Part shown: positions 50,848 through 54,701 of the stretch, one piece after another | How positions within the stretch are numbered: the stretch's first letter is position 1 | Layout of the letters: every line of letters starts with the position of its first letter | NCBI RefSeq assembly: GCF_022045235.1 | Contig: NW_027266308.1 | Location: 68,944,001-69,008,000, forward strand | Direction of reading: 5' to 3' | Length of the DNA stretch: 64,000 nucleotides | Source: Haliotis cracherodii | Taxonomy: Eukaryota | Translations under genes and position numbers: made by a program | Notes under the pieces: model-generated | What the model was told of the DNA's origin: nothing | The model's database searches: none | The model's input: the letters and a program-made list of their open reading frames with translations, nothing else

Positions 50848-51270
50848 TCATAGTATCACACATCTACAACAGTCTTTCTCTGGCTCATTCTGGCCTCCAC
50901 CAACGCGGCTTTTCTTTGTCATACAAGCTGCGTGCGCTGCTGTGAGAAACACCGACCTGACGCCATCGTTATTGAGAGATGAACACTCCACATAGTCCAC
51001 GACCTTCAATTCACGTGCCAACCTCTGACCTTCCTCGTGGAGCACGGGCTTTTTACCGATCTCTGCTAAGCCTGACTTGACGACAGAATTGTTCCGGAGG
51101 TCAAGTTTGGTGCCAACGACAATTATTGGGATCTCAGGCTGGGCAGACCGGATTTCCGGCATCCATTTTTCCCGCACATTTTCAAAGGATTCTGGACAGG
51201 AAATGTCGAAGCAGACGACAAACACGTCAGTGGTCATGTACTCCAGCAACCGTAGAGACAGGGAGCTGTC
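50848..51270 (-). CDS. Atypical Rho GTPase gene A, exon 3 (DSSLSLRLLEYMTTDVF...VGTKLD...ECSSL...DCCRCVIL*)
   Basis: tttgtag acceptor, phase 0; SFENVREKWMPEI, G4 TKLD, full-length Rho insert, CAAX CVIL. Confidence 0.96.
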   Translation of the reverse strand, partial: DSSLSLRLLEYMTTDVFVVCFDISCPESFENVREKWMPEIRSAQPEIPIIVVGTKLDLRNNSVVKSGLAEIGKKPVLHEEGQRLARELKVVDYVECSSLNNDGVRSVFLTAAHAACMTKKSRVGGGQNEPEKDCCRCVIL

Positions 51271-51967
51271 CTACAAAAGACAAGAAACCCGATACAGCAA
51301 AGGATGCTACATAATCTGTATCATTTACTTAAAGAATATGAATATAAATTGTGTTTCCCAAAAGAATATCACTTTTGAAAGAACAATGATCACATGTCTA
51401 GGGTATCCTTGGTCGGGGTCAGATTACGTCCCCAGAACCTAGTGCTTGCCTTAAGAGCAGACTAAATTGGGGATTGGTTGGTCAGGGTCTGTAGCTTAAT
51501 CCGTTGATCATGTTATCCAACAGCGGGCTGTCTGGCCCTGACTCAAATATTTACAGGGCGTCGTAATATAGCTTGGATGCCGCGGTTTAAAACAACATTC
51601 ACCCAGGGCGCCAATTTGGGTGGCAGGCAGCCCACGGATGATGTCACGAAGAGTAAGTGCGTGTCTTGAGACAAGGGCCTATCCTTCATGTAATGTAATA
51701 TCATATGTTTTCTTGAAGAGTTTTAAAAAAGTCATCTGCGTCTTACTTTTCTTTTTCAAAATAAACAAAGGCATGTGAGGATTTTGAGCTGTGCGGGCGA
51801 GTGAAACTGACACTCGTTCTCAGACACAGATCTGACGTGTTGGCGTTGGGACCATGAAGACTTCAGCTAACGGGACAACCATTCTATATAACCAACAGCA
51901 CCCTGCAAATCTAAGGCTCGATTTGGGGTTTATGACAAGGGGTTGAGGGGCTGTCTGTGGCACTGAC

Positions 51968-52056
51968 CAGTCCCAGCGTGTCGGTGAAGTCCAGGTCGTA
52001 ACGTTGTCCGTCCACCTGGATATTGGGGTAGGTGCTCTGGTTGAAACCGGTACCAG
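51968..52056 (-). CDS. Atypical Rho GTPase gene A, exon 2 (89 bp): (A)GTGFNQSTYPNIQVDGQRYDLDFTDTLGL
   Basis: ttttgtttcttgttccag acceptor, CTG|gtcagt donor; phase 1 to phase 0; IQVDGQRYDL beta-strands; G3 reads DTLGL. Confidence 0.92.
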
Positions 52057-53387
52057 CTGGAACAAGAAACAAAAGTGTCATATAAGGGTATATCAGCTGT
52101 TGAATTGAGGCACTCGTCACCACTCTCATATGTCCGTAACTTACAGGAGGGGTGCCTTCGTCTTGTCCCGGAATGGCACGTGTTGGTCACGAATGGAAAT
52201 GTAAAACTTTATCGGTTTGAGGGGAGTGTAATCGACGTGAGGATTTTGAGAATATGCGGAAAATACCAATACCAAACCCACCTGTTCATAAAATGGACTT
52301 GTCCGACATTGCCGAGGTCGGATTCTATTCAAGGAGTCATCATTTTTAAAATACGGGTACATATTTTTAAAGCTTGTACATTTCATCATCTGACTGTACT
52401 GTTTCGCCCCTCATGGTTTATTGTCCCTGCAGTGTTTTATTGTAGATATCCGGCTTCCCACGATTCAGCATAACCTGATCTGTTATCATGTAATACAAAA
52501 TAAACATTCTCTATAAGCATTTTCGTATGTCGGTGATGATTAAATCATGTAAAATGTGATGTTTTCAAAAAAACATTTTTGTTGAGAATTCTGAATCGAC
52601 ACATACAATTTAAGTCTAGAAGAAAAAAAACTTCACAAAAGTTATAGGTTCAAATGTGCCTACCAAGGGATTACATGTAAGTTTTCAAAACCAAAATGAT
52701 GTTTTTATATAACAACGCTCGAGTCCGATGCGTTGATGTTTGCTCTCCCAAACACTGATGTCTTTGTTTTCAAATTCTAGGGACATCAAAATTGTAAAAT
52801 GGTGGAGAATCTGGTTTTGTGGAAACCCTAACTGCTTGATCTGATGTGGAATATGCCGCAATTGTAATTGTTCTAGCCAAAGTAAACAAGGCGGGCTGGG
52901 CCGACTACAGTGGAAATGTCACAGCATCGGCGGGCGGCTGTCAATTGAGAAGGCCATAGGGACATTATAGCACAACATATTAACATATCATTTGATGTCG
53001 GTGGTTAATAACCGTTAATGTACAAAGTGACCCACTACATAACCACACTGGTTTAATATCAGCTGTTTTGGGGAATTGGATAACTCTTATACGAGCAACG
53101 TGATGGATCGACGCCTCTATCATCCGTCAGTCATATGAGATGTGCTAGCGAGAGGCAGCTTGCACATTGTGTGGTAGCAAGGCAAAGGAAACGGTCGAGT
53201 AGCTTCTAAATAGGACATTCTCGTGGTATGCATCACACATCAACACACGTGACGTAACATCCGGGCAGGAGTGGAATATGGTAAACTATCGTCTTCATTC
53301 GACGCCTGCTCACCCAGGGTCGCACTTGTTCGGAAATAACGAACCCAGAACTGGTCCTAGTAAACTTGTATGGAAGGTCTCATACTA

Positions 53388-54094
53388 ATGCCATATACCA
53401 TAGCCATATACCATAGTCATGTACCATAGCCATATACCATAGCCATATACCATAGCCACAAACCACAATCATACACTTTAGCGATATACCACAGTCACAT
53501 ACCACAGTCGTATACCATAGTCATATACCACAATCATACACCATAGTCATATACCACAGTCATATACCATAGTCGTATACCATAGCCATATACCATAGTC
53601 ATATACCATACCCATAAACCACAGTCATACACCAGAGCCATAAACCACATTCATACACCTATCCATATACCATAGTCATATACCACAGCCATAAACCACA
53701 GTCATATACCATAGCCATAAACCACAGTCATACACCATGGTCATACACCATAGCCATAAACCAGTCATACACTTTAGCGATATACCATTGTCATATACCA
53801 TATTCATATACCATAGGCATACACTATAGTCATATGCCATGGTCATACACCGTAGTCATACACCAGTCATACACCACAGTCATATACCATAGCCATAAAC
53901 CACAGTCATACACGATCGTCATACACCATAGCCATAAACCAGTCATACACTTTAGCGATATACTATAGTCATATACCATAGCCATAAACCACAGTCATAC
54001 ACCATAGCTAAAAACCATAGTCATACACCATAGCCATATACCATAGCCATATACCACAGTCATTCGTTAACCACAGGCATATATCATAGCCATA
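53388..54094. repeat. Minisatellite, 13-bp unit (gene A intron 1)
   Basis: catataccatag(c/t). Confidence 0.92.
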
Positions 54095-54289
54095 AAATTG
54101 TCGTGAGGTCATCGAACCGTGACATCATATAACACACCGAACATCAGGGTTGAGAGTACAGCTTGTGTATGATACAGCAGACATATACGTTTATGATTGG
54201 ACAACAGAACTGCACCCGGCAGAGAGAGGGTTCAGGCCAAATGAGTCACCACATATTTGCTTTTTGCAACTGATGGAATACCAAATCAA

Positions 54290-54540
54290 ACTGGGTATCC
54301 GTCTACATACGCATAAGGTCTACACAGCCTTAAACTGGGTACGCGTCTACTCAGTGACTTAAGACATTACACCTAGGATCGAGCTACTGATGACATGCCA
54401 CTTCAGACTGGGTATCCGTCTACATACGCATAGGGTCTAGACAGCCTTAGACTGGGTACGCGTCTACTCAGTGACTTAAGACATTACACCAAGGACCGAG
54501 CTACTGATGACATGCCACTTCAGACTGGGTATCCGTCTAC
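54290..54540. repeat. 117-bp tandem duplication abutting the gene A exon 1 donor
   Basis: ctgggtatccgtctac at 54291, 54408 and 54525. Confidence 0.88.
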
Positions 54541-54544
54541 TCAC

Positions 54545-54701
54545 CAAGATGCCACTCGAACGACGCCGGGACGCATGCTGGGTACTTCTTGGTGACGTAA
54601 GTCAGCAACAAACACGTCTTGCCCACTTGACTGTCTCCGACCACGGTCACCTTCAAGGTCCTGTGTTTGCTGACCACTCTCCGCTTGCCAGAGCTTGACA
54701 T
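54545..54701 (-). CDS. Atypical Rho GTPase gene A, exon 1: MSSSGKRRVVSKHRTLKVTVVGDSQVGKTCLLLTYVTKKYPACVPASFEWHL
   Basis: P-loop GDSQVGKT; G|gtgagt phase-1 donor; in-frame TAA about 50 nt upstream of the ATG. Absent from the ORF track. Confidence 0.94.

What the first reader, a model, noticed from the sequence alone, without database searches (positions are those of the whole stretch)
50848..54701. Gene A carries G12S, A13Q, A59L and Q61L equivalents and a remodelled switch II
Seen: P-loop GDSQVGKT, G3 DTLGL (with Thr at the W/F56 position), switch II DSSLSLRLLEY in place of EDYDRLRPLSY, G5 CSS in place of CSA, while G4 TKLD and the Rho insert are intact. Known: positions 12, 59 and 61 are those altered in GTPase-deficient Rnd proteins, and RhoH differs at 12 and 61. 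Inference: hydrolysis-dead and probably unable to engage standard GAPs/GEFs; convergent with Rnd/RhoH via different residues.
Basis: partly seen in the sequence, partly recalled or inferred. Interest (0 to 1): 0.8.

Follow-up and report, generated by a model that had tools for sequence, protein, structure and literature searches.

The report
Abalone Rho GTPase without catalytic residues
This is a real, transcribed and conserved abalone gene for a Cdc42/Rac-like small GTPase that has lost the residues needed to hydrolyse GTP, and it belongs to a snail-specific pair of such genes that no paper I could find describes, though similar "always-on" Rho proteins are known in vertebrates.

Summary
On the minus strand, three coding exons (54701-54545, 52056-51968, 51270-50848) encode a 222-aa Rho-family protein identical to a public black abalone protein named only "uncharacterized protein".

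RNA contigs from four organisms join exon 2 to exon 3 exactly as modelled. No alternative DTAGQ exon exists.

The odd residues are invariant in four Haliotis species. Most are also shared with a vent snail ortholog (53% identical).

Gene A, its neighbour gene B and their orthologs form a gastropod clade derived from Cdc42/Rac-type genes. It is not related to Rnd or RhoH, so convergence holds. The remodelled switch II and A13Q are Haliotis-only.

Best reading: a nucleotide-binding, hydrolysis-dead, membrane-anchored pseudo-switch with a new effector surface. The biochemistry is inferred, not shown.

This is a new variant of a known kind, of moderate interest. The scan earlier found another switch-damaged Rho cluster in this genome, on other DNA.

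The parts
54545..54701 (-). Coding exon 1 (Met1 to Leu52, plus the first base of codon 53). It holds the variable basic N-terminus, the P-loop and switch I.
   Evidence: ATG at 54701 and donor G|GTGAGT after 54545. Pfam Ras hit, E 8e-6. Identical to residues 1-52 of P0003.
54615..54638 (-). P-loop GDSQVGKT (G12S and A13Q in Cdc42 numbering; Lys16 and Thr17 are kept).
   Evidence: Invariant in four Haliotis species; Gigantopelta has GDSGVGKT.
54549..54575 (-). Remodelled switch I, CVPASFEWH (Y32C, T35A, V36S, D38E, N39W, Y40H).
   Evidence: Alignment to solved Cdc42. The 12-residue stretch CVPASFEWHLAG is identical in Haliotis and Gigantopelta.
52057..54544 (-). Intron 1. It holds a 13-nt tandem array (53392-54063), a 117-nt repeat of 2.2 copies (54286-54540) and a dispersed repeat (about 52143-52502).
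   Evidence: No Rho-like exon by tblastn.
51968..52056 (-). Coding exon 2 (89 nt; Ala53 to Leu82). Its first roughly 30 nt are the 10-codon insertion; it ends with G3 DTLGL.
   Evidence: Acceptor CAG| and donor |GTCAGT. RNA contigs of four runs cover 51967-52057 and then continue at least 323 nt into sequence that is not the adjacent intron. Exon 2 is 59 nt in gene C and 86 nt in gene B, with the same intron phases.
51968..51982 (-). G3 motif DTLGL (A59L and Q61L; Asp57 and Gly60 are kept).
   Evidence: DTLGM in Gigantopelta A; DTVGL or DTVGM in B-type genes.
51271..51967 (-). Intron 2 (697 nt, GT..AG).
   Evidence: Skipped exactly by one contig in each of runs X1, X4, X7 and X12. Depth is zero across the intron.
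50848..51270 (-). Coding exon 3 (Asp83 to Leu222, plus stop). It holds switch II, G4 TKLD, the Rho insert, G5 CSS, the hypervariable tail, Cys216/Cys217 and CAAX CVIL.
   Evidence: Pfam Ras hit, E 4e-20. Covered by RNA contigs.
51238..51270 (-). Switch II, DSSLSLRLLEY. This form is specific to Haliotis.
   Evidence: Gigantopelta A has DEYKPLRVIAY.
50851..50871 (-). Membrane-anchor tail: Cys216-Cys217 (candidate palmitoylation sites) and CAAX CVIL (geranylgeranyl type).
   Evidence: CC.CVIL is invariant in Haliotis. The lipid assignment is inferred from the CAAX rule and from RhoB/TC10 precedent (PMC8305018, PMC13236570).
50703..50847 (-). At least 145 nt of 3' UTR.
   Evidence: The RNA contigs of X1, X4 and X7 run through it to the end of the laid stretch. 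They carry one extra T after 50846 relative to the assembly.

Best explanation
Gene A is a functional, transcribed member of a gastropod-specific pair of Rho paralogs, A-type and B-type. The pair arose by tandem duplication from a Cdc42/Rac-type gene; the canonical gene C still lies next to them.

The protein keeps every motif that holds a guanine nucleotide. It has lost the residues that hydrolyse GTP (Gly12, Gln61), the switch I threonine that senses the gamma-phosphate (Thr35), and most residues contacted by DH-type GEFs, RhoGAPs, RhoGDI and CRIB effectors.

It most likely sits at a membrane, permanently nucleotide-loaded (probably GTP). The anchor would be a geranylgeranylated CAAX cysteine plus probably palmitoylated Cys216/217.

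It is probably not cycled by GEF/GAP/GDI. It would be controlled by expression and turnover instead. It would act through a lineage-specific surface built from the conserved CVPASFEWHLAG segment and the 10-residue insert.

Shown here: gene structure, transcription and splicing, conservation, ancestry and fold. Inferred: nucleotide state, lack of hydrolysis, lipidation and partners.
For: Structure and expression: the three-exon model has canonical splice sites and equals public P0003. RNA contigs from four organisms skip 51270..51967 exactly, do not cover the intron, and continue 5' of exon 2. The genome holds no intronless copy.

Selection: there are 22 differences from H. asinina. Only 6 fall in the 185-residue core and 16 fall in the 37 terminal residues (Fisher p = 5e-10). 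Coding differences seen in the RNA contigs are synonymous, apart from I65M and two changes in the hypervariable tail. Gigantopelta keeps an intact 227-aa ortholog with GDS.VGKT, CVPASFEWHLAG, the insert and DTLGM.

Nucleotide-binding motifs: G..GKT, D..G, TKLD and CSS are invariant.

Fold: AlphaFold2 gives pLDDT 85 and pTM 0.81. TM-scores normalised to the target are 0.9-0.95 to RhoA, Rac and Cdc42, and the insert helix is present. Switch I/beta2 is modelled differently and with low confidence.

Ancestry: the best solved relatives are Cdc42 (150 bits). Tree support is A clade 99/96, B clade 100/99, A+B 88/84, inside the Cdc42 group 88/90. Intron positions and phases are identical in A, B and C. 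A and B lie on one contig with consecutive accessions in Gigantopelta as well.

Precedent: Rnd and RhoH lack Gly12 and Gln61 and are GTPase-deficient and constitutively GTP-bound (PMC8305018, PMC13236570).
Against: No biochemical measurement exists. T35A weakens Mg2+ and gamma-phosphate coordination in other small GTPases, so the bound nucleotide, or any stable binding at all, is uncertain. Thr61 and Pro63 in the insert are invariant in all A and B proteins, and Thr55 (Ser in Gigantopelta) is conserved in A-type. One of these could substitute for Thr35 and restore some switching, which cannot be tested here. Some small GTPases without Gln61 (Rap) are still switched off by a GAP that supplies the catalytic residue. 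It rests on five independent public gene models and on contigs that leave the genome at the exon 2 acceptor. Placement with Cdc42 rather than Rac is favoured but not significant (AU p = 0.105).
Confidence: 0.6

Rival explanations
1. Nucleotide-free pseudoGTPase. The G domain no longer binds GTP or GDP and serves only as a prenylated scaffold.
For: Thr35 is Ala. Bulkier residues (Ser12, Gln13) sit in the P-loop. Switch I is remodelled and modelled with low confidence.
Against: Lys16, Thr17, Asp57, Gly60, the TKLD guanine-specificity motif and the CSS motif are invariant from Haliotis to Gigantopelta, and in B-type genes. That is hard to explain if no nucleotide is bound. Ras and Rho proteins mutated at position 12 or 13 still bind nucleotide (general knowledge).
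Confidence: 0.15
2. Still a regulated switch. A dedicated lineage-specific GAP would supply the catalytic residue in trans (as RapGAP does for Rap), or a surrogate Thr in the insert would restore a loaded-spring switch.
For: Thr61 and Pro63 of the insert are invariant in all A and B members, and Thr/Ser55 is conserved in A-type. The nucleotide-binding motifs are kept.
Against: Ser at position 12 would hinder an arginine-finger type GAP. Leu/Met61 and Leu/Val59 have been fixed for a very long time. Switch II in Haliotis has lost Tyr64 and Arg66. No candidate GAP was identified.
Confidence: 0.12
3. Decaying tandem duplicate (a pseudogene, or on the way to one).
For: It has lost several catalytic residues and sits in a tandem array next to a canonical paralog.
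Against: The ORF is intact and 221-227 aa long in five species. The core is far more conserved than the termini (p = 5e-10). It is spliced and transcribed in four organisms.
Confidence: 0.02
4. Model artefact. The real transcript would use another exon 2 with DTAGQ, or different exon 1/2 boundaries that remove the insertion.
For: Exon 1 was not included in the stretch laid with reads. Contigs drop rare isoforms.
Against: tblastn with Rac and Cdc42 finds no other Rho-like exon between 50848 and 54701. One contig per run in four runs carries the 51968-52056 exon joined to exon 3. The insertion is in frame and is conserved in Gigantopelta and, one codon shorter, in gene B.
Confidence: 0.03

Closest known systems
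Rnd1/Rnd2/Rnd3 (RhoE)
   Same: Rho-family proteins with non-Gly at position 12 and non-Gln at 61. They are GTPase-deficient and constitutively GTP-bound, poorly handled by GAP and GDI, and regulated by expression and turnover (PMC8305018, PMC13236570).
   Different: Different descent. Gene A's best solved relatives are Cdc42, RhoG and Rac, and no Rnd chain is among the 60 best. The substituting residues differ (Ser/Leu/Leu). The CAAX is of the geranylgeranyl type (CVIL), whereas Rnd proteins are farnesylated (PMC8305018). Gene A also has Ala at Thr35, plus the 10-residue insert, features that were not among the Rnd traits I found described. Molluscs are reported to have their own Rnd genes (PMC4669188).
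RhoH
   Same: Lacks Gly12 and has an altered G3/switch II. It is GTPase-deficient, GAP-insensitive and controlled by expression level (PMC13236570).
   Different: Not an ortholog. RhoH is described in haematopoietic cells of mammals (PMC13236570). Gene A's defining switch I remodelling and exon-2 insertion have no stated counterpart in RhoH.
Cdc42 and the lophotrochozoan Cdc42-like paralog (gene C here; Biomphalaria P0120)
   Same: These are the nearest relatives by sequence (41-46% identity, 150 bits to human Cdc42). They share the fold, the Rho insert length and the intron positions and phases. Gene C is a tandem neighbour.
   Different: Canonical Cdc42 has G12, T35, Y40, A59 and Q61 and binds CRIB effectors, GEFs, GAPs and GDI. 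Gene A differs at all of these positions.
RhoB / TC10 (prenylated and palmitoylated Rho proteins)
   Same: Cysteines lie just upstream of the CAAX cysteine. In RhoB and TC10 such cysteines are palmitoylated, and in RhoB this goes with escape from RhoGDI (PMC8305018, PMC13236570).
   Different: RhoB and TC10 are catalytically competent switches. Palmitoylation of gene A is only predicted.
Abalone cluster of Q61-less, non-prenylated Rho-like genes (scan finding s1-838689; C45, about 15.6-15.84 Mb)
   Same: Same genome and same theme: Rho paralogs that lost hydrolysis residues yet are kept under selection.
   Different: Different locus and branch. Those are reported to lack the lipid anchor and the Rho insert, both of which gene A keeps. 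They are only 31-38% identical over the last exon.

Membership tests
Rho family of Ras-like small GTPases | Ras-type G domain with G1-G5 motifs | tested here: met
   Pfam PF00071 on exon 1 (E 8e-6) and exon 3 (E 4e-20). G1, G3 (D..G), G4 and G5 are present. The G2 Thr is replaced.
Rho family of Ras-like small GTPases | Rho insert helix between beta5 and alpha4 | tested here: met
   No gap relative to Cdc42 across the insert. Predicted helix at 144-152.
Rho family of Ras-like small GTPases | Rho fold | tested here: met
   Foldseek top hits are RhoA, Rac and Cdc42, with target-normalised TM 0.87-0.95 and rmsd 1.3-2.2 A.
Rho family of Ras-like small GTPases | C-terminal CAAX box | tested here: met
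   CVIL followed by a stop at 50848-50862.
Canonical Cdc42 subfamily | Closest sequence relatives and tree position | tested here: inconclusive
   The best PDB hits are Cdc42. The tree places A+B inside the Cdc42 group (88/90). Grouping with Rac is not rejected (AU p = 0.105). Branches are long.
Canonical Cdc42 subfamily | Catalytic and switch residues G12, T35, Q61 and the effector-loop residues F37, D38, Y40 used by CRIB effectors | tested here: not met
   Ser12, Ala35, Leu61, Glu38 and His40; only Phe37 is kept.
Rnd subfamily | Substitutions at positions 12 and 61 (and 59) | tested here: met
   S12, L59 and L61. The residues differ from those in Rnd.
Rnd subfamily | Orthology: Rnd proteins as nearest relatives | tested here: not met
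   The 60 best of 159 solved relatives are Cdc42, RhoG, Rac and RhoB, none Rnd. No Rnd sequence could be put in the tree, because none was returned by a tool.
Rnd subfamily | Farnesyl-type CAAX | tested here: not met
   CVIL ends in Leu, the geranylgeranyl type (rule from PMC8305018).
RhoH | Orthology to RhoH | tested here: not met
   Not among the best solved relatives. The specific relatives are all molluscan.
PseudoGTPase: nucleotide-binding but catalytically inactive | Catalytic residues lost while nucleotide-binding motifs are retained | tested here: met
   Sequence level only.
PseudoGTPase: nucleotide-binding but catalytically inactive | Measured nucleotide binding without hydrolysis | not testable with these tools
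   Needs purified protein.
Gastropod A/B atypical Rho clade (defined here) | [FM]-[ED]-W-[HN] in switch I, no Thr35, a 9-10 codon extension of exon 2, and D-T-[LV]-G-[LM] | tested here: met
   Present in Haliotis A and B, Gigantopelta A and B, and Batillaria B. Absent from the other 260-odd Rho proteins fetched.

The most novel reading that the evidence does not exclude
The A/B pair is an old Rho subfamily that no paper I could find describes. It is at least as old as the common ancestor of abalones, vent snails and caenogastropods, and possibly mollusc-wide if the Mactra protein belongs. It abandoned the Thr35/Gln61 switch-and-hydrolysis mechanism altogether. It built a new, strongly conserved binding surface from switch I plus an exonised piece of intron. 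It has stayed in tandem next to a canonical Cdc42-like gene, perhaps as a constitutive modulator or antagonist of that gene's pathway, in the way Rnd proteins antagonise RhoA.
Probability: 0.35. Interest if true: 0.6.

Novelty: new variant of a known kind. Interest (0 to 1): 0.45.

Why it matters
GTPase-deficient Rho proteins (Rnd, RhoH) are usually discussed through the mammalian cases. This gene shows the same outcome reached independently in molluscs from a Cdc42/Rac-type ancestor, with different residues. It also shows loss of the switch I threonine and a new insert made by moving a splice acceptor.

The canonical parent-type gene, an intermediate paralog (B) and the most derived paralog (A) lie side by side. 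The locus is therefore a natural series for asking how a molecular switch turns into a constitutive, differently wired signalling protein. It also adds to evidence that abalone genomes carry several independent families of switch-damaged Rho genes.

Tried and rejected
1. Alternative exon 2 with DTAGQ. tblastn of Rac1, Cdc42-like and Gigantopelta proteins against the window found the only DTAGQ exon at 3406-3477, which belongs to gene C. Rejected.

2. The high-scoring bivalve hits P0006 and P0008, and the multi-stretch hits of the big search (P0125-P0140). These are fused or tandem Rho models with inflated scores, not specific relatives. Rejected.

3. Other atypical-looking proteins from the big search (P0210, P0251, P0244, P0272, P0229). 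They do not group with gene A.

4. Mactra P0205 groups with A+B (93/94) but sits on a very long branch. I kept it only as 'possible'.

5. dN/dS from ortholog coding DNA. I used the distribution of protein differences and the differences seen in RNA contigs instead.

6. The pseudoGTPase review PMC7544640 is not held.

7. Literature searches for a description of this subfamily in abalone, gastropods or molluscs found none. The bivalve survey PMC4669188 lists only the standard subfamilies.

8. A tree with Rnd, RhoH and RhoU sequences.
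Full report
**What is there**

The region 50848-54701 holds a three-exon gene on the minus strand.
- Exon 1 runs from the ATG at 54701 to 54545, with donor G|GTGAGT.
- Exon 2 runs from 52056 to 51968, with acceptor CAG| and donor |GTCAGT.
- Exon 3 runs from 51270 to the stop at 50848-50850, with acceptor TAG|.
- The phases fit (157 + 89 + 423 nt) and give 222 codons.

I never built or typed a joined sequence. The exon 3 search returned a public protein cluster. One member, P0003 (XP_071079777.1, 'uncharacterized protein', Haliotis cracherodii), is identical to the model over all three exons. 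Whole-protein steps used that stored protein by its id. The contig length recorded for P0003 (70,628,833) equals that of the window's contig C45, so the window is black abalone.

**Check of the observation**

HMMER alignment to solved human Cdc42 chains fixes the numbering.
- GDSQVGKT gives G12S and A13Q.
- DTLGL gives A59L and Q61L, with Thr at position 56.
- Switch II is DSSLSLRLLEY.
- G5 is CSS, G4 is TKLD, and the Rho insert has normal length.
- Coordinates were verified.

- Switch I is also rebuilt. One residue is deleted, and Y32C, T35A, V36S, D38E, N39W and Y40H are present.
- Ten extra residues follow it.
- The tail carries Cys216-Cys217 just before a geranylgeranyl-type CAAX (CVIL).

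**Transcription and splicing**

I stopped short of the 672-nt, 13-nt-period tandem array in intron 1, because the tool turns away long repeats.

In four runs from four coded organisms, one contig per run covers the 3' UTR and exon 3. Each contig skips 51270..51967 exactly (CT..AC on the plus strand, which is GT..AG on the gene's strand) and covers exon 2. Each then continues for 323-492 further letters that do not match the adjacent intron. The unique intron sequence has zero depth.

The genome holds no intronless copy, so the joined form is RNA.

Canonical Rac and Cdc42 queries find no other Rho-like exon inside the gene.

The exon 1-exon 2 junction rests on two things. Five independent public gene models agree on it. 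The in-frame sequence across it is also conserved.

**Selection**

- Orthologs of 221-222 aa exist in H. rufescens, H. rubra and H. asinina (90-99% identity), and all the unusual residues are invariant.
- Against H. asinina, 6 of 185 core residues differ, versus 16 of 37 terminal residues (Fisher p = 5e-10).
- Coding differences seen in the RNA contigs are synonymous, except I65M in one organism and two changes in the hypervariable tail.

**Relatives**

The word search with P0003 found one specific relative outside Haliotis. It is Gigantopelta aegis XP_041354504.1 (P0007, 227 aa, 53% identity). It shares GDS.VGKT, the identical 12-residue CVPASFEWHLAG, the insert, DTLGM and a CAAX box.

The exhaustive HMMER search of 1.84 billion representatives found nothing closer than generic Cdc42/Rac at 41-46% identity. 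The exceptions were fused multi-domain models with inflated scores.

The window carries two more Rho genes on the same strand:
- Gene B has exons at 43320-43187, 40232-40147 and 33814-33425. It has GDGGVGKT, LPGSMDWH, DTVGL and CAAX CVVS.
- Gene C has exons at 15551-15420 and 3464-3406, and a last exon 2.3 kb before the window's start. It is canonical, with [15 protein letters not shown] and DTAGQ.

Gene B has orthologs in Haliotis, Gigantopelta (XP_041354505.1, the accession next to the A-type, on the same contig) and the caenogastropod Batillaria.

Tree support is as follows:

| Grouping | Support |
|---|---|
| A clade | 99/96 |
| B clade | 100/99 |
| A+B | 88/84 |
| A+B plus a long-branched Mactra protein | 93/94 |
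| All of these inside the Cdc42 group | 88/90 |

An AU test does not reject placing A+B with Rac (p = 0.105).

Intron positions and phases are identical in A, B and C. Exon 2 is 59 nt in C, 86 nt in B and 89 nt in A. The insertion is therefore a 9-10 codon extension at the 5' end of exon 2, as expected from an upstream shift of the acceptor.

This suggests an order of events:
- The common ancestor of A and B lost Thr35 and Gln61, and gained W-H, the insert and Leu/Val59.
- The A lineage then gained Ser12.
- Only Haliotis gained Gln13 and the Ser/Leu-rich switch II.

**Structure**

AlphaFold2, run on a 96-sequence alignment, gives mean pLDDT 85 and pTM 0.81. The model is a normal Rho G domain with the insert helix at 144-152. 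Foldseek places it on RhoA, Rac and Cdc42, with target-normalised TM 0.87-0.95. The segment 48-53 is modelled as a short helix instead of the start of beta2. Residues 51-60 have low confidence. The classical effector edge is therefore predicted to be rebuilt.

**How it most likely works**

Established knowledge of Ras and Rho enzymology applies here. Gly12 and Gln61 are needed for intrinsic and GAP-stimulated hydrolysis, and Rnd and RhoH lack them and stay GTP-bound (PMC8305018, PMC13236570).

The other roles I cite from my own knowledge rather than a paper read here:
- Thr35 binds Mg2+ and the gamma-phosphate.
- Phe37, Asp38 and Tyr40 carry CRIB binding.
- Tyr64, Arg66 and Phe/Trp56 are contacted by GEFs, GAPs and GDI.

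Gene A keeps all nucleotide-holding motifs but lacks these residues. I therefore read it as a nucleotide-binding, hydrolysis-dead protein that the standard regulators do not cycle. It would be membrane-anchored by geranylgeranyl plus probable palmitate. It would act through the conserved new switch I/insert surface.

The caveats are these:
- T35A may weaken nucleotide binding.
- Thr61 and Pro63 (invariant in all A and B proteins), or Thr/Ser55, could act as surrogates.
- A trans-acting GAP of the RapGAP kind cannot be excluded.

**Comparison and novelty**

The gene works like Rnd and RhoH but is not a member of either. Its nearest relatives are Cdc42/Rac-type, its CAAX type differs, and molluscs are reported to have their own Rnd genes (PMC4669188).

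The gene is already annotated in public databases under generic names ('uncharacterized protein', 'cdc42 homolog', 'ras-like GTP-binding protein RHO'). I found no paper describing the subfamily. I class it as a new variant of a known kind.

The scan had already reported a separate cluster of switch-damaged Rho genes in this genome, on other DNA (s1-838689). I saw its last exons as weak hits but did not examine them.

**Limits**

- The biochemistry is untested.
- There is no codon-level selection test.
- No Rnd or RhoH sequences could be placed in the tree.
- Long branches affect the deep placement.
- The N run at 59131-59264 was left untouched.

Noticed in passing
window 33425-43320 (-): Gene B is the sister paralog (203 aa, P0341, 'cdc42 homolog'). 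It has GDGGVGKT, LPGSMDWH (Thr35 is Gly), a 9-codon longer exon 2 (40147-40232), DTVGL, a Rho insert three residues shorter, and a farnesyl-type CAAX (CVVS). Orthologs exist in Haliotis, Gigantopelta and Batillaria.
   Followed up: partly
window 3406-15551 (-), and L001 7298-7696: Gene C is a canonical Cdc42-like paralog (G12, T35, Q61, CAAX CIIL). It is 64-91% identical per exon to Biomphalaria P0120. Its last exon lies about 2.3 kb before the window's start. It shares intron positions and phases with A and B.
   Followed up: partly
window 53392-54063, 54286-54540, 50599-50702, 50000-50309: Tandem repeats lie in and around gene A: a 13-nt unit of 52 copies in intron 1, a 117-nt unit of 2.2 copies just 3' of exon 1 in intron 1, a 25-nt unit of about 4 copies, and a 27-nt unit of about 10 copies downstream of the gene.
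   Followed up: no
window about 52143-52502 (intron 1): Many high-depth RNA contigs from all four runs match this stretch only partly, at 92-95% identity, and run on into unlike sequence. This looks like a transcribed dispersed repeat, not an exon of gene A.
   Followed up: no
window 50846: RNA contigs of runs X1, X4 and X7 carry one extra T after 50846, two bases past the stop codon in the 3' UTR, relative to the assembly. This is a polymorphism or a one-base assembly error outside the coding sequence.
   Followed up: no
window 39260-40258 (+): A 332-aa mechanical ORF made of TDTLLY-like repeats lies across a tandem repeat inside gene B's intron. It is probably not a gene.
   Followed up: no
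G000:C56:21.10-21.29 Mb (L002, L004, L005, L007, L008): A tandem cluster of at least ten RhoA-like genes or exons. At least one copy has an in-frame stop and DTSEQ in place of DTAGQ (L004 7691-8107). One divergent copy has a GDAGCGKS P-loop (L005).
   Followed up: partly
G000:C45:15.61-15.84 Mb, C45:59.5-59.96 Mb, C23:2.87-2.88 Mb, C15:9.86-10.02 Mb, C8:16.33 Mb: Further clusters of Rho-like last exons (31-53% identical to gene A). The first is the cluster already reported by the scan as Q61-less and non-prenylated. Abalone seems to have a much expanded Rho repertoire.
   Followed up: no
Proteins P0239 (Ruditapes) and P0205 (Mactra): Bivalves also have Cdc42-like paralogs with Thr35 lost and Gln61 replaced (YPGGWDNY with DTSGL; DTIGT with a long switch I insert). 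The Ruditapes protein groups with the C-type gene, so it is a further independent loss.
   Followed up: partly
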